A DNA stretch of 64,000 nt from Macrostomum lignano (GCA_002269645.1 NIVC01000112.1:330520-394519), one strand, 5' to 3'. Shown: positions 2,401-62,949, numbered from the stretch's first letter. Translations and numbers: made by a program. The notes: generated by a model from the letters alone, not told the origin.

Positions 2401-2539
2401 ACACACATACACACAGACAAACATCGCGTCAGTTTTAGTGTTAGGAGATATATATATATATATATATATATACAATATTATGATAATTAAAAAGTGCACA
2501 CAAACCATTTTAGTATAATGGATTCAGTTAAATACTATT

Positions 2540-18232: not shown

Positions 18233-22754
<4,522 letters not shown>

Positions 22755-25305: not shown

Positions 25306-27115
25306 ACAACCCTCACTAGGCTACAACCCCACACTAGGCTACAGCTACAGCCCCTCACTAGGCTACAACCCCTCACTAGGCTACAACCCCTCACTAGGCT
25401 ACAACCCCTCACTAGGCTACAACCCCACACTAGGCTACAGCTACAGCCCCTCACTAGGCTACAACCCCTCACTAGGCTACAGCTACAGCCCCTCACTAGG
25501 CTACAACCCCTCACTAGGCTACAACCCCACACTAGGCTACAGCTACAGCCCCTCACTAGGCTACAACCCCTCACTAGGCTACAACCCCTCACTAGGCTAC
25601 AACCCCTCACTAGGCTACAACCCCTCACTAGGCTACAACCCCTCACTAGGCTACAACCCCTCACTAGGCTACAACCCCTCACTAGGCTACAGCTACAGCC
25701 CCTCACTAGGCTACAACCCCTCACTAGGCTACAACCCCTCACTAGGCTACAATCCCACACTAGGCTACAACTCCCCCATTAGGCTACAACTCCCCCATTA
25801 GGCTACAACTCCCCCATTAGGCTACAACTCCCCCATTAGGCTACAACCCCTCACTAGGCTACAATCCCACACTAGGCTACAATCCCACACTAGGCTACAA
25901 CCCCTCACTAGGCTACAACCCCACACTAGGCTAAAACCCCTCACTAGGCTAAAACCCCTCACTAGGCTACAACCCCTCACTAGGCTACAACCCCTCACTA
26001 GGCTACAACCCCTCACTAGGCTACAATCCCACACTAGGCTACAACTCCCCCATTAGGCTACAACTCCCCCATTAGGCTACAACTCCCCCATTAGGCTACA
26101 ACCCCTCACTAGGCTACAATCCCACACTAGGCTACAATCCCACACTAGGCTACAACCCCTCACTAGGCTACAACCCCCCATTAGGCTACAACCCCTCACT
26201 AGGCTACAATCCCACACTAGGCTAAAACCCCTCACTAGGCTACAACCCCTCACTAGGCTACAACCCCTCACTAGGCTACAATCCCACACTAGGCTACAAC
26301 TCCCCCATTAGGCTACAACTCCCCCATTAGGCTACAACTCCCCCATTAGACTACAACTCCCCATTAGGCTACAACCCCTCACTAGGCTACAACCCCTCAC
26401 TAGGCTACAACCCCTCACTAGGCTACAACCCCTCACTAGGCTACAACCCCTCACTAGGCTACAACCCCTCACTAGGCTACAACCCCACACTAGGCTACAG
26501 CTACAGCCCCTCACTAGGCTACAACCCCTCACTAGGCTACAACCCCTCACTAGGCTACAATCCCACACTAGGCTACAACTCCCCATTAGGCTACAACTCC
26601 CCATTAGGCTACAACCCCTCACTAGGCTACAATCCCACACTAGGCTACAATCCCACACTAGGCTACAACCCCTCACTAGGCTACAATCCCACACTAGGCT
26701 ACAACCCCTCACTAGGCTACAACCCCACACTAGGCTAAAACCCCTCACTAGGCTAAAACCCCTCACTAGGCTACAACCCCTCACTAGGCTACAACCCCTC
26801 ACTAGGCTACAATCCCACACTAGGCTACAATCCCACACTAGGCTACAACCCCTCACTAGGCTACAACCCCCCATTAGGCTACAACCCCTCACTAGGCTAC
26901 AATCCCACACTAGGCTAAAACCCCTCACTAGGCTACAACCCCTCACTAGGCTACAACCCCTCACTAGGCTACAACCCCTCACTAGGCTACAATCCCACAC
27001 TAGGCTACAACTCCCCCATTAGGCTACAACTCCCCCATTAGGCTACAACTCCCCCATTAGGCTACAACTCCCCCATTAGGCTACAACTCCCCCATTAGGC
27101 TACAACCCCTCACTA
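25306..27115. repeat. 18-bp minisatellite (CTAGGCTACAACCCCTCA) with variant units
   Basis: Direct inspection. Confidence 0.97.
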
Positions 27116-27834
27116 GTCACCCCTTAGCTACTGTATTAACGGACTGTCAGGATATTTTGAACAACCGCAAACTTTTTTCAAGCATGGGACACATGGGGCT
27201 GAATGAAGCCATGCTCAGAGTGGGTTACCGAGGAGCTTCTGGCTAAGAAATAAAAGTGAGAGAAAGCCTTTAAGACAAACAAGCATTTGACACAATAATT
27301 TCCTGTTGTTTGCGTGTTGACAACTCTTCTCCGCAATTCTAATTACAAAGCAGAAGCCGCTTAGAATTCCTAGGAAATTTCCACAATAAATGGAAATTCT
27401 TTGAGTTTTCCTGACTGCCGTGCATCTCCTTTCAGCGCGCGGAAGCAAGGCTCAAAAATTGACACTTCTGTAGCTGTGTAGGCAACCTACCCTCCGCGCC
27501 GCCATGCTTAACGGCCAGTCCGATTCGAGGTCTCTCAAAATATCAGGAATCAGAACGTGACAAACAGCGATACTGCTTTTTTAAGCTGAATACAAAAAGC
27601 AGCGTTTTAAAATTCAAAATGAAACGAGGCTGCCCAAACAGAAGGACAAAGGGAGACAGGAGCGCCCAAAGTCCCTAAAGCTCCACCGCTGCCTTCCGCC
27701 AAACCGGATATGAATTTTCAATAATTCAGTGAAATTGCTTTCTCTGAATTGTGAAACATGATAACTGGCTGCTCCATGCCTCACTTCCATTGTTAATTAA
27801 CATGCACATCTCATTCCAAGCGAAACAATGAAAA

Positions 27835-31399: not shown

Positions 31400-34348
31400 C
31401 GCTCCCATTTCTCTTGCCATTCCTCCCATCCGCCCCTCTGCGTCCCAGCTATCAGCCCTCATTCCTCCCAGCTATCTGCCCCATTCCTCCTAGCTATCTG
31501 CCCCATTCCTCCCAGCTATCAGCCCTCATTCCTCCCAGCTATCTGCCCCATTCCTCCTAGCTATCTGCCCCATTCCTCCCAGCTATCAGCCCTCATTCCT
31601 CCTAGCTATCTGCCCCATTCCTCCTAGCTATCTGCCCCATTCCTCCTAGCTATCCGCCCCCATTCCTCTCAGCTATCCGCCCCATTCCTCCCAGCTATCT
31701 ACCCCATTCCTCCTAGCTATCCGCCCCCATTCCTCCCAGCTATCTGCCCCATTCCTCCTAGCTATCCGCCCCCATTCCTCCCAGCTATCTGCCCCATTCC
31801 TCCTAGCTATCCGCCCCCATTCCTCCCAGCTATCTGCCCCATTCCTCCTAGCTATCCGCCCCCATTCCTCTCAGCTATCCGCCCCATTCCTCTCAGCTAT
31901 CCGCCCCATTCCTCTCAGCTATCCGCCCCCATTCCTCTCAGCTATCCGCCCCCATTCCTCCCAGCTATCTGCCCCATTCCTCCTAGCTATCCGCCCCCAT
32001 TCCTCTCAGCTATCCGCCCCATTCCTCCCAACTATCTGCCCCATTCCTCCCAGCTATCCACCCCCATTCCTCCCAGCTATCTGCCCCATTCCTCCCAGCT
32101 ATCTGCCCCATTCCTCCCAGCTATCTACCCCATTCCTCCTAGCTATCCGCCCCCATTCCTCCCAGCTATCTGCCCCATTCCTCCTAGCTATCCGCCCCCA
32201 TTCCTCCCAGCTATCTGCCCCATTCCTCCTAGCTATCCGCCCCCATTCCTTCCTCAGCTATCTGCCCCATTCCTCCAGCTATCTGCCCCATTCCTCTCAG
32301 CTATCCGCCCCATTCCTCTCAGCTATCCGCCCATTCCTCTCAGCTATCCGCCCCATTCCTCCCAGCTATCTGCCCCATTCCTCCTAGCTATCCGCCCCAT
32401 TCCTCCAGCTATCCGCCCCATTCCTCTAGCTAGCTATCCGCCCCATTCCTCTCAGCTATCCGCCCCATTCCTCTCAGCTATCCGCCCCATTCCTCTCAGC
32501 TATCCGCCCCCATTCCTCTCAGCTATCCGCCCCATTCCTCCCAGCTATCTGCCCCATTCCTCCTAGCTATCCGCCCCCATTCCTCAGCTATCCGCCCCAT
32601 TCCTCCCAACTATCTGCCCCATTCCTCCCAGCTATCCACCCCATTCCTCCCAGCTATCTGCCCCATTCCTCCCAGCTATCTGCCCCATTCCTCCCAGCTA
32701 TCCCCCATTCCTCCTAGCTATCCGCCCCATTCCTCCCAGCTATCCGCCCCTCCGCTATCCGCCCCATTCCTCCTAGCTATCCGCCCCCATTCCACCCAGC
32801 TATCTGCCCCATTCCTCCTAGCTATCTGCCCCATTCCTCTCAGCTATCCGCCCCATTCCTCTCAGCTATCCGCCCCATTCCTCTCAGCTATCCGCCCCAT
32901 TCCTCTAGCTATCCGCCCCATTCCTCCAGCTATCTGCCCCATTCCTCCTAGCTATCCGCCCCATTCCTCTCAGCTATCCGCCCCCATTCCTCCCAGCTAT
33001 CTGCCCCATTCCTCCAGCTATCCCCCCCATTCCTCCCAGCTATCTGCCCCATTCCTCCCAGCTATCTGCCCCATTCCTCCCAGCTATCTGCCCCATTCCT
33101 CCTAGCTATCTGCCCCATTCCTCCTAGCTATCTGCCCCATTCCTCCCAGCTATCCGCCCCATTCCTCCCAGCTATCCGCCCCATTCCTCCCAGCTATCTG
33201 CCCCATTCCTCTCAGCTATCCGCCCCATTCCTCTCAGCTATCCGCCCCCATTCCTCCCAGCTATCTGCCCCATTCCTCCTAGCTATCCGCCCCCATTCCT
33301 CTCAGCTATCCGCCCCATTCCTCCCAGCTATCTGCCCCATTCCTCCCAGCTATCCACCCCCATTCCTCCCAGCTATCTGCCCCATTCCTCCCAGCTATCT
33401 GCCCCATTCCTCCCAGCTATCTGCCCCATTCCTCCTAGCTATCTGCCCCATTCCTCCTAGCTATCTGCCCCATTCCTCCCAGCTATCTGCCCCATTCCTC
33501 CAGCTATCCGCCCCATTCCTCCAGCTATCTGCCCCCTTCCTCCTAGCTATCTGCCACATTCCTCTCAGCTATCCGCCCCCATTCCTCCCAGCTATCCGCC
33601 CCCATTCCTCCTAGCTATCCGCCCCCATTCCTCCCAGCTATCTGCCCCCTTCCTCTCAGCTATCCGCCCCATTCCTCTCAGCTATCCGCCCCATTCCTCT
33701 CAGCTATCCGCCCCCATTCCTCTCAGCTATCCGCCCCCATTCCTCCCAGCTATCTGCCCCATTCCTCCTAGCTATCCGCCCCCATTCCTCTCAGCTATCC
33801 GCCCCATTCCTCCCAACTATCTGCCCCATTCCTCCCAGCTATCCACCCCCATTCCTCCCAGCTATCTGCCCCATTCCTCCCAGCTATCTGCCCCATTCCT
33901 CCTAGCTATCTGCCCCATTCCTCCCAGCTATCTGCCCCATTCCTCCCAGCTATCTGCCCCATTCCTCCCAGCTATCTGCCCCATTTCTCCCAGCTATCCG
34001 CCCCCATTCCTCTCAGCTATCCGCCCCCATTTTTCTCAGCTATCCGCCCCCATTCCTCCAGCTATCCACCCCCATTCCTCTCAGCTATCCGCCCCCATTC
34101 CTCTCAGCTATCTGCCCCATTCCTCCCAGCTATCTGCCCCATTCCTCCCAGCTATCAGCCCTCATTCCTCCCAGCTATCCACCCCCATTCCTCCCAGCTA
34201 TCAGCCCTCATTCCTCCCAGCTATCCACCCCCATTCCTCTCAGCTATCCGCCCCCATTCCTCTCAGCTATCCGCCCCCATTCCTCTCAGCTATCCGCCCC
34301 CATTCCTCTCAGCTATCCGCCCCCATTCCTTCCAGCTATCCGCCCCAT
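31400..34348. repeat. About 22-23-bp minisatellite (CCCCATTCCTCCCAGCTATCYGC), about 3 kb
   Basis: Direct inspection. Confidence 0.97.
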
Positions 34349-34978
34349 GCGCCCCAGCTTATTGTGTATACTTTAAGTAGAATAGAATTGAATATCGGAT
34401 TATTATATGAATATAATATTCCGACTCTATGACGTCAATACATGACTCGAAGCAAAGGTCACGGACAAAAAAATGAGGCAAGAGGAACAGAGGGTATTTG
34501 CACAGTACAAGATTCGCAAACAAGTGTGTTAGTAGAAGTTCATGAAGCAAAGAAGCCCCAACACACATCTGCTTCCGTAGCCGTGTGAGCAGTGAGAACA
34601 GTTTTAAAAACGTAGCTTTAGATGAAGCCGCATCTCACAGGTGAATTTCATGCATCCAGCGGGCAATGTTGCCTCCCCACCTCTCACTCGCCTGTCCTAC
34701 AGAAATTCGCTATCTTTCAAAGCAAGAGGCGGCTGAGATTGTAGCGAAGGAAACCTCGGGTCGACTGCTCCGTTGCTCAATCTGCAAGTTGCGTGCGCGA
34801 CAGACGGAAGCTTCTGGCAGCATGAAGATGGGCAGTTGCTGAAGACGTCACAGACAGCTAGCATTAGCTTTAACTAGATGCAACTGCTGTTCATGTGTGC
34901 AATATGATGTTTTATTTATCATATTTTGCAAGACTTTATGACAACGCTCTATTTCATTTAAATTAAAAAATTAAAAAC

Positions 34979-36287: not shown

Positions 36288-37034
36288 ATGGCTTCGCCTC
36301 TGTCAGGCCATGAGATCCAAATGGACTATTCTCAATGGGAGAATCGGCTGCAGTCCATCGCAGCTCACTGGTACCCGCAGTACATTCAGCCATGTCAGCT
36401 GGCTGACAGCGGCTTCTATGCTCTTCCCAACAGCCAGGGCGAAGCCACTTGCTTCAGTTGCGGCTGCAGTATCAGCGACTGGTCCCGCCACACCAACGCC
36501 TGGCTGCCACACGCCCTGCGGTCTCCTCAGTGCCAGCATCTCCGCCTGCAGCTGGACCAACGGCCTGACATCCTGCTGGAGTTCATCGTGCGCCCGATGC
36601 TGCAGCAGCCCCGACAGGACCAGCTCATCTGGTCCCTGCTCGCCGGTCTAAGCACCGAAACAGCTCAGACTCTGGCGGCGAACCCTCGGGCTGCCGAGCT
36701 GCTGCAGCTCCGTCAACAGCCCACAGAGGCTCAGCGGTTGCGAAGCCTCGGAGATGAGCAGCTGCCGCAGCAGGCCAGAGACCTAGCGGCGAAGTGCGCC
36801 GTCTTCAACCGGCCAGCCCAGTTTCCCGGCTTCGAAACCGCGGACGAAGTCAAGATGCCCGCCGGTCTGGAATGTCGGATCTGCTTCGCCCAGCCGCTGC
36901 AGGTTCTCCTGCTGCCGTGCGGGCATCTCTGCTGCTGCCGGAGCTGCTTCGGCCGGATCAGCATGGAACAGCGGGCCAGGTGTCCGATCTGCAGAGCTCA
37001 CCTGGATGCTCACCTGAGTGTCCGAATCACCTAG
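36288..37034 (+). CDS. Inhibitor-of-apoptosis (BIRC/IAP family) protein, 248 aa, one BIR plus C-terminal RING, intronless
   Basis: BIR has RLQS, LADSGF and C-x2-C-x16-H-x6-C (CFSC...H..RSPQC). C3HC4 RING: CRIC..PCGH..C..C..CPIC. Confidence 0.93.
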   Translation: MASPLSGHEIQMDYSQWENRLQSIAAHWYPQYIQPCQLADSGFYALPNSQGEATCFSCGCSISDWSRHTNAWLPHALRSPQCQHLRLQLDQRPDILLEFIVRPMLQQPRQDQLIWSLLAGLSTETAQTLAANPRAAELLQLRQQPTEAQRLRSLGDEQLPQQARDLAAKCAVFNRPAQFPGFETADEVKMPAGLECRICFAQPLQVLLLPCGHLCCCRSCFGRISMEQRARCPICRAHLDAHLSVRIT

Positions 37035-45241: not shown

Positions 45242-45344
45242 CTGGTGAGGGTTTGAGACGATTAAAAAATAAGTATGATGATGTCATAGGCAGGAGGCTA
45301 GGTGGCACTGTAACAGCTAACAGGTACAGAAGTACTGGATGGGA

Positions 45345-46540
45345 CTGTGACAGCTACAGAGAGACCGGTGGGACTGTGACAGCTACAGAGAGACCGGTGG
45401 GACTGTGACAGCTACAGAGAGACCGGTGGGACTGTGACAGCTACAGAGGGACCGGTTTGATTGTGACAGCTACAGAGGGACCGGTGGGACTGTGACAGCT
45501 ACAGAGAGACCGGTGGGACTGTGACAGCTACAGAGGGACCGGTGGGACTGTGACAGCTACAGAGAGACCGGTGGGACTGTGACAGCTACAGAGGGACCGG
45601 TGGGACTGTGACAGCTACAGAGGGACCGGTGGGACTGTGACAGCTACAGAGGGACCGGTGGGACTGTGACAGCTACAGAGGGACCGGTGGGACTGTGACA
45701 GCTATAGAGGGACTGGATGGGGCTGTGACAGCTACAGAGGGACCGCGGTGGGACTGTGACAGCTACAGAGGGACCGGTGGGACTGTGACAGCTACAGAGA
45801 GACCGGTGGGACTGTGACAGCTACAGAGGGACCGGTGGGACTGTGACAGCTACAGAGGGACCGGTGGGACTGTGACAGCTACAGAGGGACCGGTGGGACT
45901 GTGACAGCTACAGAGGGACCGGTGGGACTGTGACAGCTATAGAGGGACTGGATGGGGCTGTGACAGCTACAGAGGGACCGCGGTGGGACTGTGACAGCTA
46001 CAGAGGGACCGCGGTGGGACTGTGACAGCTACAGAGGGACCGCGGTGGGACTGTGACAGCTACATAGGGACCGCGGTGGGACTGTGACAGCTACAGAGGG
46101 ACCGGTGGGACTGTGGCAGCTACAGAGAGACCGGTGGGACTGTGGCAGCTACAGAGAGACCGGTGGGACTGTGGCAGCTACAGAGAGACCGGTGGGACTG
46201 TGACAGCTACAGAGAGACCGGTGGGACTGTGACAGCTACAGAGAGACCGGTGGGACTGTGACAGCTACAGAGGGACCGCGGTGGGACTGTGACAGCTACA
46301 GAGGGACCGCGGTGGGACTGTGACAGCTACATAGGGACCGCGGTGGGACTGTGACAGCTACAGAGGGACCGGTGGGACTGTGGCAGCTACAGAGAGACCG
46401 GTGGGACTGTGGCAGCTACAGAGAGACCGGTGGGACTGTGACAGCTACAGAGAGACCGGTGGGACTGTGACAGCTACAGAGAGACCGGTGGGACTGTGAC
46501 AGCTACAGAGGAACCGGTGGGACTGTGACAGCTACAGAAA
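45345..46540. repeat. Intronic 29/31-bp minisatellite (GAGACCGGTGGGACTGTGACAGCTACAGA)
   Basis: Direct inspection. Confidence 0.97.
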
Positions 46541-46999: not shown

Positions 47000-48622
47000 C
47001 AGCTGGATATAGCTGGATTAGCTGGATTAGCTGGATTAGCTGGATTAGCTTGATATAGCTGGATTAGCTGGATTAGCTGGATTAGCTGAATTAGCTGGAT
47101 TAGCTGGATTAGCTGGATTAGCTGAATTAGCTAGATTAGCTGGATTAGCTAGATTAGCTGGATTAGCTGGATTAGCTGGATTAGCTGGATTAGCTGAATT
47201 AGCTAGATTAGCTAGATTAGCTGGATTAGCTAGATTAGCTGGATTAGCTGGATTAGCTGGATTAGCTGGATTAGCTGGATTAGCTAGATTAGCTGGATTA
47301 GCTGGATTAGCTGGATTAGCTAGATTAGCTGGATTAGCTGGATTAGCTAGATTAGCTGGATTAGCTGGATTAGCTGAATTAGCTAGATTAGCTGGATTAG
47401 CTAGATTAGCTGGATTAGCTAGATTAGCTGGATTAGCTGGATTAGCTGGATTAGCTGGATTAGCTGAATTAGCTAGATTAGCTAGATTAGCTGGATTAGC
47501 TAGATTAGCTGGATTAGCTGGATTAGCTGGATTAGCTGGATTAGCTGGATTAGCTAGATTAGCTGGATTAGCTGGATTAGCTGGATTAGCTAGATTAGCT
47601 GGATTAGCTGGATTAGCTAGATTAGCTGGATTAGCTGGATTAGCTGGATTAGCTGGATTAGCTGAATTAGCTGGATTAGCTGGATTAGCTGGATTAGCTG
47701 AATTAGCTAGATTAGCTGGATTAGCTGGATTAGCTGAATTAGCTAGAATAGCTGGATTAGCTGGATTAGCTGAATTAGCTAGATTAGCTGGATTAGCTAG
47801 ATTAGCTAGATTAGCTGGATTAGCTGGATTAGCTGGATTAGCTGAATTAGCTGGATTAGCTAGATTAGCTGGATTAGCTGGATTAGCTGGATTAGCTGGA
47901 TTAGCTAGATTAGCTGGATTAGCTAGATTAGCTGGATTAGCTGGATTAGCTGAATTAGCTAGATTAGCTGGATTAGCTAGATTAGCTGGATTAGCTGGAT
48001 TAGCTGGATTAGCTGGATTAGCTGAATTAGCTAGATTAGCTAGATTAGCTGGATTAGCTAGATTAGCTGGATTAGCTGGATTAGCTGGATTAGCTGGATT
48101 AGCTGGATTAGCTAGATTAGCTGGATTAGCTGGATTAGCTGGATTAGCTAGATTAGCTGGATTAGCTGGATTAGCTAGATTAGCTGGATTAGCTGGATTA
48201 GCTGAATTAGCTAGATTAGCTGGATTAGCTAGATTAGCTGGATTAGCTGGATTAGCTGGATTAGCTGGATTAGCTGAATTAGCTAGATTAGCTGGATTAG
48301 CTAGATTAGCTGGATTAGCTGGATTAGCTAGATTAGCTGGATTAGCTGGATTAGCTGGATTAGCTGGATTAGCTGGATTAGCTAGATTAGCTGGATTAGC
48401 TGGATTAGCTAGATTAGCTGGATTAGCTGAATTAGCTAGATTAGCTGGATTAGCTAGATTAGCTAGATTTGCTGGATTAGCTAGATATAGCTGGATTAGC
48501 TGGATTAGCTGGATTAGCTGAATTAGCTAGATTAGCTGGATTAGCTAGATTAGCTAGATTAGCTGGATTAGCTGGATTAGCTTGATTAGCTGGATTAGCT
48601 GGATTAGCTGGATATAGCTGGA
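47000..48622. repeat. 9-bp satellite (CTGGATTAG; variants CTAGATTAG, CTGAATTAG)
   Basis: Direct inspection. Confidence 0.97.
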
Positions 48623-48628
48623 TGCACG

Positions 48629-51588: not shown

Positions 51589-52326
51589 ATGAGACTGCTC
51601 ATGGACGACGGCGAGGTGTGGACTTCAGCGTCGCTTCAACGTCGATTCGTCAGAAGTCCGGGCGACAGAGACAAAGACTCGGACAGAGACCCCGACGTGA
51701 GCCGCAGCTACTATTGCTATGCCAACCCGAACGATTTCGGCTGCAATCCGGCCTACATCGCAGCGGCAGTGATGAGCAGCCTGCTCATTGTCACCGCTCT
51801 CCTTGGCGTCATCATTTTCCTATGCGTCCGGCACGCCAATGCGAAACGGATGCTCAGGGTGCAGGCCCAGCTGGGCGCTCACGAGCGGGCGATATTCACG
51901 GTTCAGCAGCAGCAGGAGCAGCAGCAGCACGGCAGCTACCCGATGTCTTTGATGTTCCCGCCCGAGCCGCCGCCGTACAACTGCGAGGACTACACCCTGC
52001 CGCCGGAATCGCCACAGGGCGCTGGTCCGCCTCCGCCCTACGAGGAGCACCCGACTGGAGTTGTGGGCTCGGTGACGTCATTGTTCAACAGATTGTTCAG
52101 TGGGAGAAGGAACAGGCCGCAGACGGCTGGAGCTGGGCAGCAGGAGCAACAACAACAAACAACAGCGTCAGGCAATTCAGTTGCTAGCATTGCAGCAGCG
52201 GCCGATATTGTTGAAGATTCGGCAGCCTCGGTAGACCCCAACAAGCCTCGTCAGGCCGGACTGCATCAAGTCGCCCGACTGCCAGACACTGGCGGGAGCA
52301 GAGATGACATGCCACCAGTGAGCTAG
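51589..52326 (+). CDS. Single-pass membrane protein with two PPxY (PY) motifs, 245 aa
   Basis: TM segment YIAAAVMSSLLIVTALLGVIIFLCV followed by a basic stop-transfer sequence. Cytosolic EPPPY and PPPPY. GC3-rich codons. Confidence 0.8.
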   Translation: MRLLMDDGEVWTSASLQRRFVRSPGDRDKDSDRDPDVSRSYYCYANPNDFGCNPAYIAAAVMSSLLIVTALLGVIIFLCVRHANAKRMLRVQAQLGAHERAIFTVQQQQEQQQHGSYPMSLMFPPEPPPYNCEDYTLPPESPQGAGPPPPYEEHPTGVVGSVTSLFNRLFSGRRNRPQTAGAGQQEQQQQTTASGNSVASIAAAADIVEDSAASVDPNKPRQAGLHQVARLPDTGGSRDDMPPVS

Positions 52327-54950: not shown

Positions 54951-55294
54951 CCCCTCCCCGACCAATTAACTTTCTTCAATACTTTTCTTCGTTGATATGA
55001 TTCCTCTGGCCAATCATTTAGGACGAGTTCCAAAACTAAAGAACTAACAGTAAAGCCAGTGTTCAAATCAAAATCTTAATCAAGCATATCGTCGGGAAGA
55101 CATGAAGGAGAACTAAATTTTTTTTAATTCGAATGTAAAAACAGTTTAATTTTGTTTCTTTTGAGCTATTGTTAAAAGATGAGAAATATTTGCAAACCGG
55201 CCACAGACTTCAATCTCTTATCAAGGCTAGCCCAAACAAAGATGCAGTTGCACACTGGAATAATACTTAGTTCAACATCTAAGTCTGGGCTAAT

Positions 55295-55375
55295 TTATCA
55301 ATCAGCAATCGATCTCCAATCAATTTTAGCAATCGATTTTTTCAAGATCGCGCTTCATCGAGTGCTCTTAATAAG
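55295..55375 (-). promoter_or_regulatory. Form-2 SECIS element in the GPx 3' UTR
   Basis: Minus strand reads ATGAA(55358-55354) GCGCGATCTTG AAAAAA TCGATT-GCTAA-AATTGA TT GGAGATCGATTGC TGAT(55304-55301). This gives the kink-turn quartet, an 11-nt helix II, apical A-run and mini-stem, about 110 nt after the stop. Confidence 0.88.
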
Positions 55376-55466
55376 AGTTTTGAGAGTCTGAGGTCAAGCC
55401 AAGTAATTTGATTTATAACGAGTAATAATTAAATTGTATCAGTAAAATTACTCTCAACATCAACTT

Positions 55467-55514
55467 CTACAATTCGTCCTTGTTGAGTAGCTCAAGGATG
55501 TCCGCCTCCATGTC
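55467..55514 (-). CDS. GPX4: Sec-GPx exon 4 (DMEADILELLNKDEL*)
   Basis: Acceptor attttgcag, phase 0, TAG stop at 55467-55469. Confidence 0.88.
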   Translation of the reverse strand, partial: DMEADILELLNKDEL

Positions 55515-56224
55515 CTGCAAAATAGTGAATGAAACGTTTAAAACAAGATGTGATAATGTGATTGTACAATTTTCGTCTCCAGTCCAGATGCTAGCTAGGG
55601 AAATAACAAAATATCCACTGGCTTGATAGTAATTGTGTTGTCAATGGTCAATACTACAACTTGGATGCTCTCATTTATAATCGAATACTTCTATCTATAA
55701 AGCTATAAATCTATTTATAGAACTCCTCTGTCCCATTATAAATGCAGGTTAAAGGCGATATGTCCAGTTTTGCTGACCCTGAGCACACAACACGCATAGG
55801 TACGCCGGCAAGCACTAACACAGGATGTACAGTGGCATTGACTTGAAATTCTCATTGTCACACAGTGTCTTTAGGGTTGACTCTATGAATCAATAGTGCA
55901 GCTACTGCATTTGTGTAATTAAATTAATTAGCCACGACTCCCTGGAGTCAATTAGCGTTGCTATGCCAACCCGAAGAGCTGTTTGCACGGATTGAGTGTT
56001 GACACAAATAGATAATTAGTTAGGTAAAGGTTTATGTCTACAAAATTTGCCACCTCTATTCAGTATTTAGGGATCAGATTGTTACTATAGTTACAATAAT
56101 ACAGAGTGAGGAGTCACTGCTTTGTTGTTGCTGGGAATCTGATAAATTTGAGGATTAGTACTGAAGTAAAAACTGCAGGCTCAGAGAGGGAATAAAAAAG
56201 GAGAGGGCCTAGAGATTGGGACTA

Positions 56225-56550
56225 TAAGAGCGGGACTTGTAGAGTGGGACTTGCAGAGTGGGACTTGCAGAGTGGGACTTGCAGGATGGGACTTGCAGAG
56301 TGGGACTTGCAGAGTGGGACTTTCAGAGTGGGACTTGCAGAGTGGGACTTTCAGAGTGGGACTTTCAGAGTGGGACTTGTAGAGTGGGACTTGCAGAGTG
56401 GGACTTGCAGAGTGGGACTTGTAGAGTGGGACTTGCAGAGTGGGAATTTCAGTGGGACTTGTAGAGTGGGACTTGTAGAGTGGGACTTGTAGAGTGGGAT
56501 TTGCAGAGTGGGACTTGCAGAATGGGAATTTACAGAGTGGGATTTACAGA
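56225..56550. repeat. 14-bp intronic minisatellite (AGAGTGGGACTTGC)
   Basis: Direct inspection. Confidence 0.93.
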
Positions 56551-56648
56551 ATTTATTATATAGAAGATATAGAGCCCTTAGAACGTTAGAGTGACTTATA
56601 CTTCGAGAGTTCACCAGCCCACTATTGTCCCACATCCCAGCAGCTTAC

Positions 56649-57027
56649 CTTGGGCGCCACATTGGGCCCGTATCGTTTCACTGGCACGCCTCGCCTGTCA
56701 ATCAGAAACTTGGTGAAATTCCACTTGATGAAATCCATGAGCGTGCCGGGCAGCTGAGCTTTCAAAAACGAGAACAACGGATGTGTCCCCTCGCCATTGA
56801 CGTCAACTTTGGCATACAGGTCGAATTTAACGCCGAAACGGCTAACAACGAACTCTTTGATCTGAGCCTCGGGCCACGGCTCCTGACTGCCAAACTGGTT
56901 GCAGGGGAACGCGGCGATGGAGAGACCCCGGCCCGCTAGTCGAGTGTGCAGGTCGACCAGCTGGGCGTAGTTGCTCTCCGTGGCACCTCAGAGGCACGCC
57001 ACGTTGGTCACGACAAGGACGCGACCT
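56649..57027 (-). CDS. GPX4: Sec-GPx (PHGPx/GPx4-like) exon 3, with in-frame TGA = selenocysteine at 56988-56990
   Basis: TNVACL-U-GAT, AFPCNQFGSQEP and IKWNFTKFLID give the Sec/Gln/Trp/Asn catalytic tetrad. Acceptor ctcgcag, donor gtaagc. Confidence 0.97.
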
Positions 57028-57106
57028 CTGCGAGCGGGATTTGCGGTGGGGTTGGGTGGGGAGGGGCATTGGGAGGCTTGCCCAGCACATTGTCATCGCG
57101 GGTCTC

Positions 57107-58480
57107 TGTCTCCCTTAGCATCTCAGTCTCCCCTAGCATCTCTGTCTCTCCTAGCATCTCAGTCTCCCCTAGCATCTCTGTCTCTTCTAGCATCTCTGTC
57201 TCTCCTAGCATCTCTGTCTCCCCTAGCATCTCTGTCTCTCCTAGCATCTCTGTCTCCCCTAGCATCTCTGTCTCTCCTAGCATCTCTGTCTCCCCTAGCA
57301 TCTCTGTCTCTCCTAGCATCTCTGTCTCCCCTAGCATCTCTGTCTCTCCTAGCATCTCTGTCTCCCCTAGCATCTCTGTCTCCCCTAGCATCTCTATCTC
57401 TCCTAGCATCTCTGTCTCCCCTAGCATCTCTGTCTCTCCTAGCATCTCTGTCTCTCCTAGCATCTCTGTCTCCCCTAGCATCTCTGTCTCCCCTAGCATC
57501 TCTGTCTCTCCTAGCATCTCTGTCTCTCCTAGCATCTCTGTCTCCCCTAGCATCTCTGTCTCTCCTAGCATCTCTGTCTCCCCTAGCATCTCTGTCTCCC
57601 CTAGCATCTCTATCTCTCCTAGCATCTCTGTCTCCCCTAGCATCTCTGTCTCTCCTAGCATCTCTGTCTCTCCTAGCATCTCTGTCTCCCCTAGCATCTC
57701 TGTCTCCCCTAGCATCTCTGTCTCTCCTAGCATCTCTGTCTCTCCTAGCATCTCTGTCTCCCCTAGCATCTCTGTCTCTCCTAGCATCTCTGTCTCCCCT
57801 AGCATCTCTGTCTCTCCTAGCATCTCTGTCTCTCCTAGCATCTCGGTCTCCCCTAGCATCTCTGTCTCTCCTAGCATCTCTGTCTCTTCTAGCATCTCTG
57901 TCTCCCCTAGCATCTCAGTCTCCCCTAGCATCTCTGTCTCTCCTAGCATCTCAGTCTCCCCTAGCATCTCTGTCTCTCCTAGCATCTCTGTCTCCCCTAG
58001 CATCTCTGTCTCTCCTAGCATCTCTGTCTCCCCTAGCATCTCTGTCTCTTCTAGCATCTCTATCTCCCATCTTCTTTAGCATCTCTGTCTCTCCTAGCAT
58101 CTGTCTCCCCTAGCATCTCTGTCTCTCCTAGCATCTCTGTCACGCTAGCATCTCTGTCTTCCCTAGTATCTCAGTCTCCCCTAGCATCTCTGTCTCCCAT
58201 CTCCCTTAGCATCTCTGTCTCCCATCTCCCTTAGCATCTCTGTCTCCCCTAGAATCTCTGTCTCTTCTAGCATCTCTGTCTCTCCTAGCATCTCTGTCTC
58301 TTTTAGCATCTCTGTCTCCCATCTCCCTTAGCATTTCTGTCTCCCATCTCCCTTAGCATCTCTGTCTATCCTAGCATCTGTCTCTCCTAGCATCTCAGTC
58401 TCCCCTAGCATCTCTGTCTCTAATCTCCCCTAGCATCTTTATCTCCCATCTCCTCTAGCATCCCTGTCTCTCATCTCTCT
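57107..58480. repeat. 18-bp intronic minisatellite (CTAGCATCTCTGTCTCYC)
   Basis: Direct inspection. Confidence 0.97.
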
Positions 58481-58946
58481 ACGCACAACAATAAAAACGG
58501 TGCATTCATCTGTCAAAGGCAAATTCTCCAGCCACTATAGATGTACAGATATAATCTATAGCAGAACCCGCTAATAGTCAGCACACAGTTCTAATGCAAT
58601 CTACTTGATTTGCGAGTGATACCATGGTAACGAGGAATCGAAGGCAAAACTGATAGGTAGAGCAATCACACTGCAGTTATGAATACAAAGGCATGGGACA
58701 ATGCAATTGCTACTCAATTAATCAGTCAACGCAGGCCTTGAATAAACATAATATTCAGCTTACTCCTGTATCCAGGGATGTAGAAGAGTGCGTTTTATTT
58801 GCTCGCACGGCCCATTGCTATCCACGCTTACTACATTGAGTCATCATTGCAAAACACTACTTAGAAATTCCCAACAGTAGTATGCAAAATATTCTTAGGT
58901 TATTTATCGAAACAAAAAGGAATAGATAGCAAAAATATTCACTCAC

Positions 58947-59026
58947 TTGTACTTGCTTAGTGAAACCATGTCTCCATCAATGGTTTTGGCAGAGAAGTCA
59001 TACACTGTTCCTGAAGCAGATGAGGC
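58947..59026 (-). CDS. GPX4: Sec-GPx exon 2 (ASSASGTVYDFSAKTIDGDMVSLSKYK)
   Basis: Acceptor ctttcag, donor gtgagt. The phase-2 end AA+A joins exon 3. YDF..K.IDG..VSL..Y motif. Confidence 0.93.
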
Positions 59027-59155
59027 CTGAAAGCAGTTATGAAATTATTCATTTTTAATATCAGTTTTTCATAGCTTGATTTATCTAAAAAAACATAGAA
59101 CAACATAAAATAAATTAGACTTAACCTATAAAGACAGAGTATAAAACATGCTTGG

Positions 59156-59314
59156 GCGCAACCTAGGGATTCACCCAGCCATTCTATTGGCAACACACAC
59201 ACATGTAAGTCACTATTGGATGGAATAGTAGTCACATGACTGCTCTCAGCCAATAGCAACTTACATGTACATGTGTTGCCAATAGAAATGTCTGGGTGAT
59301 TCTAAAGGTTGCGC
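59156..59314. mobile_element. MITE-like foldback element in GPx intron 1
   Basis: Imperfect inverted repeats of about 55 bp: GCGCAACCT...CTATTGGCAACACA...CATGTAAGT. Confidence 0.7.
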
Positions 59315-60228
59315 ATGTAGGATATAAAAACAAGATATATTACTAAGAATAACAAAACAAGCTAAATAAAAACTTTTTATTTAATTTATTATAGATCACT
59401 AAGCCTGAAGTAAATTAATAAAGAATCAAAAACTAAATATCAACTTATTATATGGTATAGATTAAAATCACATCATTTAATATTAAATATAAGTAATAAA
59501 AAATCTTCATAAAGTTAAATAAAAGAAAACTTTTTTTAGATTGATGTAGTCATGATTGTTTAGCAATAGTTATTTAATATCATTCATTACTGCCTTATCC
59601 TACTTGCCTTAGTAATAGCTGCATTACTTGTTAAATAAATTGTGCAAATCATATATTCCTTTACATTTTTTCATCCTATTATGCATGCAACATATATATT
59701 TCTTGCTTATGTTTGTTTAAGTCTGTCTGCCATTTTATTAAAATTGCTATATATACAAGAAAATAAACCTTGAAAAGAGCTAACCTGTCTCTGGCCTCTC
59801 CCGCCTGGCCTTTGCCTTTTGGCCTATTGAATAGTTGTTCTAAAAATAGACCTGATTCAGCATTCAGCAGATTCTAGAGGGTGAAGTCCCAAGAGGGGGT
59901 GGAGGGGTGGCTCTGTTTTTGGCAAAAATTTGCTTGGTCCCCCCTTTGATTTTTTTGGGTCTCCAACAAAGAGAAGGAGACAACCCTTCATTTGCCATGG
60001 CTAAACTTGCATAAAAAAGGATAGGATTATAAGCCCAAAAAGTTGGCTCAATCTGCTTCTCCCTCTATATTAAAAATCTTAGATCTGCCAGTGATTCTAT
60101 CCTAAGTTACCACATTATGAAATCACCCTTTTAAATGATAAAATGCAAAAAAACACATTTTAAAATTTTAGAATAATATAAAAATGAAATACTTTAGCCA
60201 AGTAAGTAAGCAAATTTCTTAAAAATTA

Positions 60229-60834
60229 CCACACTCAGGAAGGTGTATATTATGGCGGAAAATTCTGGCGCACATCAATGAAAAATGTGCGCAAAGTGGT
60301 GCACATGGCATACAACAAAGGCTTAGCAGAAGTTTTTAGCGCATATTGGCGCATAGCAAAACCTGATCAGAAAAATTTAGCTCACAATGAGTCACCTAAA
60401 TGTATAATCTGCATATGCAGTGCGTAAAATATGCTTTTTGATTACGTTTTTTCCAAGCATATCAATAAAAAAAATTGTTTCTTGGTAAGTGAAACGAATA
60501 ATAAAATTCAAAATAAATGGGATTTTACCATAAAGATAAAGCTATTTCTTTTGAAAATTTTCTATGTGAGCTAAAATAAAGCAAAAGTTTTGAGTTGAAA
60601 AAAGCCTATATAAGGTACAAAAATTTAAGCGTGTTTTTAGTTTTGTTTTAAGTGGAATTTTACCAAGTTTTTAGTGCTATGGTGTATTAGTACTCTAGCT
60701 ATGTATTTGTCAATAAACGAATGTAGACCTCAGCGCACAAATTCATATTTTAGGCTTAGCTTCGCGCATAGCGCACACTCCAAAATTACACTGAAATATA
60801 TTCCTGCGCACATGTGACACCTTCCTGAGTGTGG
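60229..60834. mobile_element. Non-autonomous DNA transposon (606 bp) with 18-bp TIRs and 8-bp TSD, in GPx intron 1
   Basis: Perfect TIR CCACACTCAGGAAGGTGT (60229-60246 and 60817-60834). AAAAATTA on both flanks. Confidence 0.85.
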
Positions 60835-61408
60835 AAAAATTATAGGCCTAATTATAATATTGTATTGCATTCATGGGCAGTAGGAGCTTGTGGCACTGGG
60901 GGCATATGCCCTCTCCCTCCCTAGAAAATGAGTCCATACAGTAATTTTTAGTGCTTTTTCTGATTTTAAGCTCTAATTAGCAGTTACGAAGGTACATATG
61001 CCCCTATTGCCCTGTGCACAGTGCCCCCCTAAAATATTAGTCTCTGCTGTCCCTGATTGCATTAAAAATAGAGATTATTCTAAAAAACTGTTAAATTTAA
61101 AACTAAAATGAAATAAACAATTTAATATGATTTTGAATTTTACATAATCTTTGGAAATAGATTTTTTAAGTAAATAGGCCCTATAGCTAGGCATACTAGG
61201 CTATCAATTTAATGCAGTAAAGTAATATATTGCCATTGCCAACTTGCCATATATTTGTTATTTAGCCTTGTTGTAAAATTAAAAACATTAGATATGTAGA
61301 CTAGATAGGCCTGCAATGTAATAAAAATTCAAACATTAATATAAGAACTAACCTATAATTACATTATTATCATTAAACAATGACATCATATTGTTTTTAG
61401 CGTCTTAC

Positions 61409-61492
61409 CATTGCCCTAGACACAGGTTGGCGCATACACAAAGAAGAAAAGAGCAGCGGAAGCTGCATTACAAGTCCTTTGCGATAAAGCAT
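61409..61492 (-). CDS. GPX4: Sec-GPx exon 1 (MLYRKGLVMQLPLLFSSLCMRQPVSRAM): targeting leader ending in ATG
   Basis: Donor ATG|gtaag in phase 0, as in human GPX4 exon 1. Upstream acceptor ttttgcag|aa. Total CDS 84+80+379+48 = 591 nt = 196 aa plus stop. Confidence 0.75.
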
Positions 61493-62949
61493 TTCTGCAA
61501 AACTTAATACTGTTTCGTTAACCAGAAATTAATTTTATTATTAGTAAAGAGTGCAGTGAAAACTAGAAACGTAAATGATTAACTGGTAAAATTTCCGTGG
61601 CTAGTGCTCACTGTAAGTTTATAAGATTCGCGGAAAACAGTTTTTTTAAATAATTCACGTGATTGTCTTTGCTGGTAATATCAACTATAACTATGTTTTA
61701 TTCTATACAAAATAGGCAAATAGCATAAGCCTTTTGATAGTTTTACTCCATTTTGATTACTATCAAGCAATCAAATACTACTTGTGTCTACAACACAATT
61801 TGTTGTATTTGACTCGATTGTCAAGCTCTTAGCGAATTGCGATTAGGACCAACTTCCTTGCTCACTTGCAATGCTTTAGTCACTCAGCTTAGACAGGCGT
61901 CACGGCGCTATTTTCGGCGCTCCCAAACTAAATACCCAAATCCGATTGTCCAAAAGACAATAGAGCATTTTCGAAATTTTCGCAAACAAATCCCCTCGAT
62001 TAGATTTCCTGTGAGAAAATAATTATTTAATGCAAATAAAAAATTATGATTTAAATTTCAATACCAAAATTCATTTCAAAAACTCAACAATACAAGCATT
62101 TACAGCGGTAAATAACGGGTTATGTATTTTTATTTAGATAAAGCGACATTGTATCAGAAAAAAATTAAGCGATAAATACTTTTTTGAAACAACAAAATAT
62201 CAATAACCTGACAGAGTTTCTACATGTATTTTCGGAAAACTGGAACTGGAAAAAATCATAATTAAGGTATTACACACGGCAACCAGGAAAATAAATAGCC
62301 CGTGTGAATTGGGTATATCCTAGAGATGTGTAAAACATGCAATAAATTAATAACACAAAGTCTTATGTAAATAGTAAATCAAGTAGACACAAAGACATTA
62401 TTGAGCATCCTTGGCAAAGGAAGTCGGTGGAATTGAAGGAATAAATACAGCGGCTGGAACAGCAAGCTTAACAAACTGGTTTATCATGCCAACAGACAAA
62501 CATTAGGGGGAATGATCTCAGTGAAGACCTGTAAGCCAAACAGTGCATTATTACAAGGATTGCACAGTTAAATTTTGTATTTGCTGATTTTTGTAAAAAC
62601 GAAATTTCATACTTATACATGACTACTAACGGCTGCAACTAGAAGTACAATACGCGAATATTATAACTGTAATTTGCTTATCAGTTACAGTGCAACTATA
62701 TCAATAATTGCGGATGAGTTGCACAATGCGACTTCATTAAAAAGATGCTTAATATTTCGACTAGACTCTGAGGTGGACCGAGTTGTAAGAAAAAATTGGA
62801 CCAAAATCTATAAAAAATAAATAAGTATTACGCATTCTAAATAAATTATTTTAATCTGGTTAAGCTGAGATGTCAATTTGACGGAATCATGAGATGAGAT
62901 TATGGTGAATCATTTAGTTGGGCTTCACAACCGTTAAAAGTTTTATATT

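What the first reader, a model, noticed from the sequence alone, without database searches (positions are those of the whole stretch)
55467..61492. Selenocysteine GPx4-like enzyme with a signal-peptide-like leader and a C-terminal KDEL
Seen: a 4-exon, 196-aa gene missed by the ORF track because of the in-frame TGA (56988-56990). It has a canonical form-2 SECIS, a CxU active site (ACLUG), a 27-aa leader (basic MLYRK, hydrophobic GLVMQLPLLFSSLCM, S-R-A cleavage-like site) before Met28, and ends ...LLNKDEL*. Established: the ER-resident GPx7/GPx8 of vertebrates are Cys enzymes, while Sec-GPx4 is cytosolic, mitochondrial or nuclear and lacks KDEL. As recalled, Schistosoma PHGPx is very similar (NVACKUGAT) but lacks KDEL. 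Inference: this may be an ER-luminal selenoenzyme GPx, with a cytosolic isoform from Met28. The leader could instead be mitochondrial, since human GPX4 also has 27 residues before Met28.
Basis: partly seen in the sequence, partly recalled or inferred. Interest (0 to 1): 0.72.

Follow-up and report, generated by a model that had tools for sequence, protein, structure and literature searches.

The report
Selenocysteine GPx4-type peroxidase ending in KDEL
This is an intact flatworm-type selenium-containing glutathione peroxidase gene that carries an N-terminal targeting leader and a textbook ER-retention tail (KDEL), which would make it the first selenocysteine GPx of the endoplasmic reticulum if localisation experiments confirm it.

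Summary
On the minus strand lies a four-exon, 196-codon gene with GT..AG introns. It has one in-frame TGA at the catalytic position (VACL-U-GAT), a form-2 SECIS-like hairpin 109 nt after the stop, a 27-residue leader before Met28, and a C-terminal KDEL.

The protein is a GPx4/PHGPx-type monomeric peroxidase, not a GPx7/8. Its nearest relative is the Sec-GPx of the flatworm Macrostomum lignano (65% identity overall, 71% in the core) with the same intron positions. That gene has neither the leader exon nor the KDEL.

The ER reading is plausible but unproven. For it:
- An exact KDEL is expected by chance about 2e-4 times, given this family's tail composition.
- In the wider family, -[DE]L tails occur only with hydrophobic leaders (8 of 27 against 0 of 20).
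- Leader and KDEL appear together here.

Against it:
- The leader is only weakly hydrophobic, has four basic and no acidic residues, and resembles the GPX4 mitochondrial leader.
- No close orthologue could be found to test conservation.
- No transcript confirms exon 1.

My estimates are ER-retained long isoform about 0.5, mitochondrial or cytosolic with an accidental KDEL about 0.3, and leader not expressed about 0.12. The short form from Met28 may arise by spliced-leader trans-splicing.

The parts
61409..61492 (-). Exon 1. ATG1 is at 61492-61490. Codons 1-27 (61492-61412) encode the leader MLYRKGLVMQLPLLFSSLCMRQPVSRA. The Met28 codon is at 61411-61409 and is followed directly by the donor GTAAGA.
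   Evidence: An in-frame TAA lies 39 nt upstream. GC is 0.46 against 0.19-0.31 in the flanks. It is the only ATG|GTR site upstream of exon 2 with a long open frame that contains ATGs. No transcript evidence.
58947..59026 (-). Exon 2: ASSASGTVYDFSAKTIDGDMVSLSKYK(1-2). It begins at the acceptor ...ctttcag|GCC and has no start codon of its own. It is a possible spliced-leader acceptor.
   Evidence: It matches the M. lignano exon SSAEPSTVYDFEAVDIDGNNVSMDKYK, which has the same boundaries.
56649..57027 (-). Exon 3: the catalytic core, from GRVLVVTNVACL-U-GATES to GPNVAPK. It holds the tetrad residues Sec68, Gln103, Trp157 and Asn158.
   Evidence: 68.5% identical to the M. lignano exon, including its TGA.
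56988..56990 (-). In-frame TGA, the selenocysteine codon 68.
   Evidence: Same column as the TGA in M. lignano (NVACK*GAT), in the transcripts L001, L002 and L013, and the position of Sec in GPX4 and the S. mansoni GPx structures.
55467..55514 (-). Exon 4: DMEADILELLNKDEL plus TAG. The KDEL codons are at 55481-55470 and the stop at 55469-55467.
   Evidence: DMEAD..LL aligns with the M. lignano last exon DMEADVVKLLDEIGK.
55299..55361 (-). SECIS-like element, form 2. ATGA is at 55358-55355. Helix II has 4+7 bp with a 2-nt bulge. Unpaired A-run, then an 8-bp mini-stem with a 5-nt loop. The 3' GA is at 55303-55302. Helix I is weak (3 bp).
   Evidence: Not reported by Rfam, which also missed the control.
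55128..55155 (-). Two ATTAAA poly(A)-signal-like hexamers (starting at 55150 and 55128). These are the likely 3' end of the mRNA.
   Evidence: Pattern only.
57103..58420 (.). 18-bp minisatellite (about 74 copies) that fills most of intron 2. It creates long spurious ORFs that overlap exon 3.
56227..56550 (.). 14-bp minisatellite (about 23 copies) in intron 3.

Best explanation
This is a functional selenoprotein gene for a monomeric GPx4/PHGPx-type peroxidase of the flatworm Sec-GPx clade. The source is probably a Macrostomum-related flatworm.

UGA68 is read as selenocysteine with the help of the 3'-UTR SECIS. Sec68, Gln103, Trp157 and Asn158 form the usual catalytic tetrad, which reduces H2O2 and lipid hydroperoxides.

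Two N-termini are likely. A short form starts at Met28 (MASSASG...) and is cytosolic. It would be made by internal initiation, or by spliced-leader trans-splicing onto exon 2. A long form includes exon 1.

The long form's 27-residue leader most probably acts as a cleavable signal peptide. Its parts are n = MLYRK, h = GLVMQLPLLFSSLCM and c = RQPVSRA, with possible cleavage sites SRA|M or AMA|S. The C-terminal KDEL then retrieves the enzyme from the Golgi to the ER lumen. There it would remove Ero1-derived H2O2 and membrane hydroperoxides, using GSH or PDI-type thiols. That is the job done by the Cys enzymes GPx7/8 and by PRDX4 in vertebrates.

Shown: the gene model, the family, the Sec codon, the SECIS-like fold and the KDEL. 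Inferred: use of exon 1, ER import, KDEL function and the reductant.
For: Gene and family:
- S. mansoni GPx 2.4e-64, human GPX4 about 1e-53, GPx7/8 about 1e-28 to 1e-30.
- It is sister to Macrostomum inside the flatworm clade.
- The M. lignano gene has identical intron positions and a TGA in the same column.
- SECIS.

ER reading:
- The exact KDEL has probability 2.4e-4 under the family's own tail composition and 2e-5 under generic composition.
- Among 47 homologues with N-terminal extensions, -[DE]L tails (KDEL, KVEL, KGEL, KHEL, RQEL and others) occur in 8 of 27 with hydrophobic leaders and in 0 of 20 without (Fisher p=0.007).
- KVEL-type variants are proven ER signals (PMC2140024).
- An insect GPx4-type Cys enzyme has a signal peptide plus KDEL (P0040).
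- The closest relatives have neither leader exon nor KDEL (M. lignano L011/L012 and the transcript L013). The two signals therefore appear together in this gene.
- The leader has a signal-peptide layout with Pro at -5 and small residues at -3/-1 (sequence).
- Phyla reported to lack GPx7, among them Platyhelminthes, Nematoda and Hexapoda, would have a vacant niche (PMC8614756).
Against: - The leader's hydrophobic core is weak for a signal peptide. Its best 9-residue KD mean is 2.11, against 2.7-3.5 for clear signal peptides in the family. The core is interrupted by Q, P and SS.
- The leader carries +4/-0 charge, including R21 and R26 after the core. It fits R-2/R-3 processing motifs (R-A|M, R-A-M|A).
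- It has the length, the position and the Met28-at-exon-end architecture of the GPX4 mitochondrial leader.
- A trematode relative has a similar leader plus Met and no KDEL (P0004).
- Flatworm GPx leaders have been read as mitochondrial/non-mitochondrial variants (PMC2679728).
- No orthologue exists to test KDEL conservation.
- No transcript shows exon 1 joined to exon 2.
- An open frame of 39 codons has roughly a 5% chance per site in DNA of this composition (inference).
- No SignalP or TargetP was available.
Confidence: 0.5

Rival explanations
1. GPX4-like dual mitochondrial and cytosolic enzyme. The leader is a mitochondrial presequence cleaved near Met28, the short form is cytosolic, and the KDEL is a neutral accident that never meets a KDEL receptor.
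For: - The leader statistics match those of GPX4 leaders: +4/-0 charge, KD9 of 2.11 against 1.8-2.6, and 27 residues before Met28 as in whale and platypus GPX4.
- R at -2/-3 of Met28/Ala29 fits matrix-peptidase motifs (sequence).
- The trematode relative P0004 has the same layout (..APRSM|STSSG) without KDEL.
- Published work reads flatworm GPx leaders this way (PMC2679728).
- Tails after the last helix are variable and rich in K/D/E/L.
Against: - It requires a chance KDEL (about 2e-4).
- The amphipathic moment is low (0.36 against 0.65-0.70 in mammalian GPX4 leaders).
- A 15-residue uncharged core and Pro at -5 are more typical of a signal peptide.
- Leader and KDEL are both absent from the closest relative and both present here.
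Confidence: 0.3
2. Exon 1 is not part of the mature mRNA and its open frame is fortuitous. The mRNA starts by spliced-leader trans-splicing, or from another small exon, onto exon 2. This gives only the cytosolic MASSASG... enzyme, and the KDEL has no function.
For: - In M. lignano the homologous exon begins right after ...tttag|GCT TCA AGT, with an in-frame TAG just upstream.
- No leader exon lies within 10 kb upstream.
- The database model nevertheless starts MASSA, and the M. lignano SL ends ...TTGCATG (PMC8629364).
- Window exon 2 begins in the same way.
- A 39-codon open frame is not very rare in AT-rich DNA.
Against: - Exon 1 is a GC island with a consensus donor exactly after an ATG in phase 0.
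- Its peptide has a targeting-peptide composition with no acidic residue.
- It is the only such site in the 5 kb upstream.
- This reading again needs a chance KDEL.
- No SL sequence or SL gene of the M. lignano type is in the window. This says nothing about the rest of the genome.
Confidence: 0.12
3. Broken or non-Sec gene. The TGA is a true stop, giving a pseudogene or a truncated 67-aa product, and the downstream hairpin is coincidental.
For: Rfam reports no SECIS. Helix I of the hairpin is only 3 bp.
Against: - 128 codons after the TGA stay open and are conserved.
- All four splice junctions are intact.
- The TGA is in the same column as in M. lignano and in three independent transcripts.
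- The hairpin has ATGA/AA/GA with canonical spacing, and such hairpins are rare in the window (4 per 128 kb).
- Rfam also misses the control SECIS.
Confidence: 0.02

Closest known systems
Flatworm Sec-dependent PHGPx/GPx4-type enzymes (S. mansoni GPx, PDB 2v1m/2wgr; M. lignano A0A1I8I0I2; Clonorchis and Paragonimus GPxs of Bae et al. 2009, PMC2679728)
   Same: - 57-71% identity and the VAC-x-U-GAT active site.
- No resolving Cys and a monomeric type.
- An ATGA_AA_GA SECIS.
- The same three intron positions as M. lignano.
- Many members carry a hydrophobic N-terminal extension.
   Different: None of the members seen here or in that paper's text supplements ends in KDEL. The M. lignano gene has no leader exon. 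The SECIS here is short and AT-rich, whereas the M. lignano type has a long apical region.
Vertebrate GPX4 (mitochondrial long form and cytosolic short form)
   Same: - About 51-59% identity and a Sec enzyme.
- 27 residues before an internal Met28 encoded at the end of exon 1.
- A leader with basic residues and no acidic ones.
   Different: GPX4 ends ..DLPHYF or ..CYL with no retrieval signal. Its leader is experimentally mitochondrial, whereas the leader here is untested.
GPx7 and GPx8, the ER-luminal GPxs of animals
   Same: Monomeric GPx fold. N-terminal secretory signal plus a C-terminal KDEL-type tetrapeptide (REDL and KEDL). This is the proposed working analogue: peroxide removal in the ER.
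   Different: A different clade (E about 1e-28 to 1e-30, against 1e-53 to 1e-64 for GPx4-type). GPx7/8 are reported to be Cys enzymes without exception (PMC8614756). This gene has Sec.
GPx4-type Cys enzymes with a signal peptide and a KDEL-like tail (for example Belonocnema kinseyi XP_033217197, ...KKDEL; nematode-like P0148, ..KVEL, and P0128, ..HVDL)
   Same: The same two-signal architecture on a GPx4-type core, in phyla said to lack GPx7.
   Different: They are Cys enzymes, lie in other clades of the NJ tree, and have much more hydrophobic leaders (KD9 2.7 or higher).
PRDX4 (the ER form uses an exon-1 signal peptide; the testis form uses an alternative exon 1 and is cytosolic, PMC7577974)
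   Same: A peroxidase whose compartment is set by which first exon is used.
   Different: An unrelated fold (peroxiredoxin) with no Sec and no KDEL.

Membership tests
Glutathione peroxidase family (Pfam PF00255) | GSHPx domain above the Pfam gathering score | tested here: met
   137 bits against a cut-off of 27, E=2.3e-40, residues 36-144.
Glutathione peroxidase family (Pfam PF00255) | Catalytic tetrad: Sec/Cys, Gln, Trp, Asn | tested here: met
   U68, plus Q103, W157 and N158 as invariant columns in alignment A1.
GPx4/PHGPx-type (monomeric) subfamily | Closest to GPx4-type sequences, with no oligomerisation-loop insertion | tested here: met
   S. mansoni GPx 2.4e-64 and human GPX4 about 1e-53 align end to end with only 1-2 residue indels. 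GPx1 and GPx3 score 1e-32 and 1e-24. It falls in the flatworm GPx clade in the NJ tree.
GPx4/PHGPx-type (monomeric) subfamily | No resolving Cys of the thioredoxin-dependent CysGPx type | tested here: met
   The aligned region reads KEFVVSRFGV, with no Cys (A1). The location of the resolving Cys is recalled from yeast and plant GPx literature, not taken from a tool.
Eukaryotic selenoproteins | In-frame UGA at a position that is Sec or Cys in homologues, with conserved coding sequence downstream | tested here: met
Eukaryotic selenoproteins | SECIS element in the 3' UTR (ATGA quartet, unpaired AA, GA, helix II of the right length) | tested here: inconclusive
   Manual and scripted criteria are met at 55358-55302. 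No Rfam model reported it, but Rfam also missed the SECIS in the control Sec-GPx transcript L001. SECISearch3 was not available.
GPx7/GPx8 family | Membership of the GPx7/8 sequence clade | tested here: not met
   GPx7 1.5e-29 and GPx8 about 1e-27, far weaker than GPx4-type hits.
GPx7/GPx8 family | Peroxidatic Cys (never Sec) | tested here: not met
   TGA at the peroxidatic position. The rule comes from PMC8614756.
KDEL-retrieved soluble ER residents | C-terminal KDEL-type tetrapeptide at the extreme C-terminus | tested here: met
   ...LLNKDEL followed by TAG.
KDEL-retrieved soluble ER residents | Cleavable N-terminal ER signal peptide | tested here: inconclusive
   An n/h/c layout and -3/-1 sites are present, but hydrophobicity is marginal (KD9 2.11) and basic residues follow the core. 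No trained predictor was available.
KDEL-retrieved soluble ER residents | Actual ER-luminal localisation | not testable with these tools
   Needs cell biology.
Mitochondrial long form of GPX4 | Presequence upstream of an internal Met in the first coding exon | tested here: met
   27 residues plus Met28 at the end of exon 1. Whale and platypus GPX4 have the same count.
Mitochondrial long form of GPX4 | Import into mitochondria | not testable with these tools
   The charge pattern fits, but the amphipathic moment is low (0.36).

The most novel reading that the evidence does not exclude
A flatworm has turned a GPx4-type selenoenzyme into an ER-luminal peroxidase by adding a signal-peptide exon and a KDEL tail. 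It thereby fills the GPx7/8 role while keeping selenocysteine. The choice between cis-splicing of the leader exon and spliced-leader trans-splicing onto exon 2, where the SL donates the AUG, decides whether the same catalytic core goes to the ER or stays in the cytosol.
Probability: 0.25. Interest if true: 0.72.

Novelty: new variant of a known kind. Interest (0 to 1): 0.5.

Why it matters
All ER glutathione peroxidases described so far (GPx7, GPx8 and their invertebrate orthologues) are cysteine enzymes. Loss of Sec has been proposed to tune them towards PDI rather than glutathione (PMC8614756). A Sec-containing, KDEL-retained GPx4-type enzyme would be a natural counter-example. It would also give a direct test of whether Sec is compatible with oxidative folding chemistry in the ER.

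It would add to signs that lineages without GPx7, such as insects and nematodes and possibly flatworms, re-create an ER GPx from GPx4 stock. If the isoform switch runs through cis- versus trans-splicing, it would be a tidy example of spliced-leader AUG donation controlling protein compartment.

If the KDEL is an accident, the gene is simply one more flatworm Sec-PHGPx.

Tried and rejected
- **Rfam scans.** The region, the 3' UTR alone and the whole window gave no SECIS. I discounted this after Rfam also missed the SECIS in the control transcripts.
- **Naming the organism.**
  - Exact look-ups of the BIR-RING ORF and the 7TM-like ORF found nothing.
  - A homology search with the 7TM-like ORF found nothing at E<=1e-5.
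  - The LTR gag-pol query gave only hits of 37% identity or less across Metazoa.
  - There were no tRNA or Rfam genes.
  - The only lead is the GPx tree plus a 59-nt transposon end that is 91.5% identical to an M. lignano scaffold.
- **Close orthologues for testing KDEL conservation.** Three searches found none above about 65-71% identity: 5.8 billion clustered proteins, 1.84 billion representatives queried with exon 3, and JGI metagenome contigs.
- **The NFT sequon at the catalytic Asn as a marker against ER residence.** Rejected, because clear signal-peptide GPx4-type proteins keep WNFTK.
- **Synteny with the M. lignano GPx loci.** No shared neighbours were found, so orthologue versus paralogue stays open.
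- **M. lignano SL sequence in the window.** Absent.
- **Look-ups of the spliced N-terminal fragments (M1-L67 and M28-L67) in public assemblies.** The tool turned these away and I did not try them elsewhere.
Full report
**1. What is there**

Reading the minus strand of 55000-62000 and assembling the proposed exons gives a clean gene.
- Exon 1 is 61492-61409, exon 2 is 59026-58947, exon 3 is 57027-56649 and exon 4 is 55514-55467.
- All three introns (2382, 1919 and 1134 nt) are GT..AG, with consensus-like donors (GTAAGA, GTGAGT, GTAAGC).
- The 591-nt CDS has one internal TGA (56990-56988, codon 68) and ends AAG GAC GAA TTG TAG, which is KDEL-stop.
- The ORF track missed the gene because of the TGA. 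In addition, the 18-bp minisatellite in intron 2 generates long spurious ORFs that overlap exon 3.
- tblastn finds no second copy in the window.

**2. What family it belongs to**

- Pfam GSHPx scores E=2.3e-40.
- Against solved structures the best matches are the S. mansoni Sec-GPx (2v1m, 2.4e-64), then human GPX4 (about 1e-53).
- GPx1 (1e-32), GPx7 (1.5e-29) and GPx8 (about 1e-27) are far behind.
- Q103, W157 and N158 are invariant in alignment A1, and the TGA sits in the peroxidatic column.

So this is a GPx4/PHGPx-type monomeric enzyme, not a GPx7/8.

**3. Selenocysteine**

- The 113 codons after the TGA are strongly conserved.
- The M. lignano homologue has TGA in the same column (NVACK*GAT). 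So do three independent transcripts (L001, L002, L013).
- At 55358-55302, 109 nt after the stop, there is a hairpin with these features:
  - ATGA, then a helix of 4+7 bp with a 2-nt bulge.
  - An unpaired A-run starting 12 nt after ATGA.
  - An 8-bp mini-stem with a 5-nt loop, then the 3' GA. This is a form-2 SECIS layout.
- Helix I is weak (3 bp).
- My crude scanner finds only four such candidates in both strands of the window, and this one is the cleanest.
- Rfam reported nothing here. It also reported nothing for two control Sec-GPx transcripts, in one of which my scanner finds a GTGA..AA..GA SECIS. The Rfam negative is therefore uninformative.

**4. Source organism and nearest relatives**

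No near-identical protein exists in the searched collections. Other ORFs of the window gave no named close hits.

The nearest GPx is from the free-living flatworm Macrostomum lignano, at 65% identity overall and 71% in the core. In an NJ tree the window protein is its sister, inside a clade with schistosome and paramphistome GPxs.

I fetched the two M. lignano loci (L011 and L012, GCA_002269645.1).
- They have the same intron positions (KYK|G and APK|DME) and the Sec TGA.
- Their genome texture is similar: GC 0.45 and many short tandem arrays.
- A MITE-like inverted repeat in intron 1 of the window (59140-59312) shares a 59-nt end at 91.5% identity with L011.

I infer a Macrostomum-related flatworm, but not M. 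lignano's annotated gene set. Synteny is not conserved. A transcript from another species (L013) is about 90% identical to the M. lignano gene and keeps its ...LLDDIGQ tail. The window gene is therefore either a paralogue or a distant orthologue.

**5. The leader**

- ATG1 (61492) follows an in-frame stop at -39 and has G at -3.
- Met28 has a stronger initiation context (GCAATGG after splicing).
- Exon 2 cannot start translation on its own. There is a stop 18 nt upstream in frame, and the first internal Met would remove strand beta-1 (read from the sequence).
- Upstream of exon 2 there are only three ATG|GTR sites in the window. Only the one at 61411 has a consensus donor, 39 open codons and in-frame ATGs.
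- Exon 1 is a GC island (0.46 against 0.19-0.31 in the flanks).

I rate exon 1 as probably real, but no transcript shows it.

Its peptide, MLYRKGLVMQLPLLFSSLCMRQPVSRA, can be read in two ways.
- **As a signal peptide.** The n-region is MLYRK, followed by a 15-residue uncharged core. Pro is at -5, and small residues sit at -3/-1 (SRA|M or AMA|S).
- **As a mitochondrial presequence.**
  - It has four basic and no acidic residues.
  - R sits at -2/-3 of the likely cleavage site.
  - The length and the Met28-at-exon-end architecture match those of GPX4.

In numbers, its best 9-residue Kyte-Doolittle mean is 2.11.
- GPX4-type leaders in the hit lists give 1.8-2.6, and the trematode homologue gives 2.23.
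- Unambiguous signal peptides of the family give 2.7-3.5.
- One likely secretory member (P0174) is also low, at 2.16.
- The helical moment is low (0.36).

These crude measures do not decide the matter.

**6. The KDEL**

- Exon 4 is confirmed by homology up to ...LL (DMEADILELL against M. lignano DMEADVVKLL), and NKDEL follows in the same exon.
- The closest relatives end DEIGK, DDIGQ, LEKK or LKEQ.
- With the family's own composition over the last eight residues, the chance of a terminal KDEL is 2.4e-4. With generic composition it is 2e-5.
- Of 268 homologues, only one other ends in KDEL. It is an insect Cys-GPx with a strong signal peptide (P0040).
- Seven more with hydrophobic leaders end in -[DE]L variants (KVEL, KGEL, KHEL, RQEL, EAEL, EREL, HVDL).
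- No protein with a non-hydrophobic extension does so (8 of 27 against 0 of 20, Fisher p=0.007).
- Variants such as KVEL are experimentally valid retrieval signals (PMC2140024).

ER-type GPx4 derivatives therefore recur. They sit in other clades, so a KDEL here would be an independent acquisition.

**7. Weighing the readings**

The rarity of KDEL, and the joint appearance of leader and KDEL relative to the nearest gene, favour a functional two-signal ER protein. The GPX4-like look of the leader and the lack of conservation or transcript data argue for caution. There is also a selection effect, since this gene was flagged because of its KDEL.

| Reading | Estimate |
|---|---|
| ER-retained long form | about 0.5 |
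| Mitochondrial or cytosolic with an accidental KDEL | about 0.3 |
| Leader not expressed | about 0.12 |
| Other (secreted or dual-targeted long form, or a broken gene) | remainder |

**8. An addition on the short isoform**

In M. lignano the first coding exon starts immediately after ...ttttag|GCT TCA AGT (A-S-S), with an in-frame TAG just upstream. No leader exon lies within 10 kb. Yet the database protein begins MASSA. The M. lignano spliced leader ends ...TTGCATG, and about 30% of its genes are trans-spliced (PMC8629364). The simplest reading is that the SL donates the initiator AUG.

Window exon 2 starts in the same way (cag|GCC TCA TCT GCT, which is A-S-S-A). Exon 1 ends ...GCAATG|GTAAGA, which puts a Met in the same place. 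If the source species has a comparable SL, cis- versus trans-splicing could choose between the leader form and the cytosolic form. This is inference only.

**9. Comparison with what is known**

- Flatworm Sec-PHGPx genes with hydrophobic N-terminal extensions and ATGA_AA_GA SECIS elements were described in 2009. Their leaders were interpreted by analogy with mitochondrial GPX4. No KDEL appears in that paper's text supplements (PMC2679728).
- A 2021 survey states that all GPx7/8 lack Sec and that GPx7 is absent from Platyhelminthes, Nematoda, Rotifera and Hexapoda (PMC8614756).
- The 2009 paper, however, reports a GPx7-like gene in a planarian.
- My literature searches found no description of a Sec-containing ER-retained GPx.

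The gene is thus a member of a known kind (flatworm Sec-GPx4-type). Its one new feature is the KDEL, which, together with a leader, suggests a new compartment for a selenoperoxidase.

**10. Verdict**

Novelty is 'new variant of a known kind', conditional on localisation. Interest is moderate (0.5).

Noticed in passing
window 59140-59312 (intron 1 of the GPx gene); L011 6641-6699: A MITE-like inverted repeat of about 175 nt (41-nt and 28-nt arm pairs). It gave weak, sub-threshold miRNA-model hits. Its 59-nt end is 91.5% identical to a stretch of M. lignano scaffold NIVC01000025.1. This is the best clue to the source organism.
   Followed up: partly
L011 9700-9830 and L012 9700-9830 (M. lignano GPx loci): The M. 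lignano Sec-GPx first coding exon begins at an AG acceptor with no ATG and an in-frame TAG just upstream. Yet the database protein starts MASSA, and the species' spliced leader ends in ATG. The initiator Met is probably donated by the SL. NCBI annotates only a 115-aa post-Sec fragment.
   Followed up: partly
protein P0174 (from; sequence): A public GPx4-type protein has a signal-peptide-like N-terminus and the tail ...KKKHEL, with Trp at the catalytic position (VNVASAWG). This is most simply a TGA read as Trp by the gene caller. It may be a second Sec-GPx with an ER-type tail from an unknown eukaryote. Several other hits also show W at this position (P0016, P0023, P0024, P0038, P0069, P0180).
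   Followed up: no
window 2539-2838 and 7996-8295: Two 100% identical direct repeats of at least 300 nt lie 5457 nt apart. They flank a gag-like CCHC ORF (3967-4557). This looks like a young LTR retrotransposon inserted next to an older gag-protease-RT remnant at 591-2420 on the minus strand (RVT_1 E=2.9e-18).
   Followed up: partly
window 23359-24639 (-): A 426-aa GC-rich single-exon ORF with only a faint 7tm_1 signal (E=0.006). It has no homologue at E<=1e-5 among 5.8 billion clustered proteins. It is either an orphan receptor-like gene or not a gene.
   Followed up: partly
window 36288-37034 (+): A single-exon 248-aa ORF with one BIR domain (1.2e-10) and a C-terminal RING (1.5e-12), i.e. 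an IAP-like protein. The exact product is not on record in public assemblies.
   Followed up: partly
window 51589-52326 (+): A 245-aa ORF with one transmembrane-like segment and two PPxY motifs (PPPY). It has no Pfam match above threshold. It lies convergent with the GPx gene.
   Followed up: no
window-wide, e.g. 18232-22754, 25297-27116, 31428-34359, 45320-46538, 47001-48623: Tandem-repeat load is very high. Examples are a 4.5-kb (CTGT)n array, further ACAG/AGAC arrays, and many minisatellites of 9-29 bp. These produce dozens of long spurious ORFs on both strands.
   Followed up: no
window 55200-55470; L001, L002: Rfam release 15 returned no SECIS hit, even at E<=10, for the window's 3' UTR or for two metatranscriptome Sec-GPx transcripts with in-frame TGA. 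A negative from this library should not be used against a eukaryotic SECIS.
   Followed up: yes
window 60531 (-): A second ATG|GTAAAA site lies in intron 1, with 10 open codons and no upstream ATG. It could serve as an alternative mini first exon supplying only the Met of the short isoform. Pattern only.
   Followed up: no
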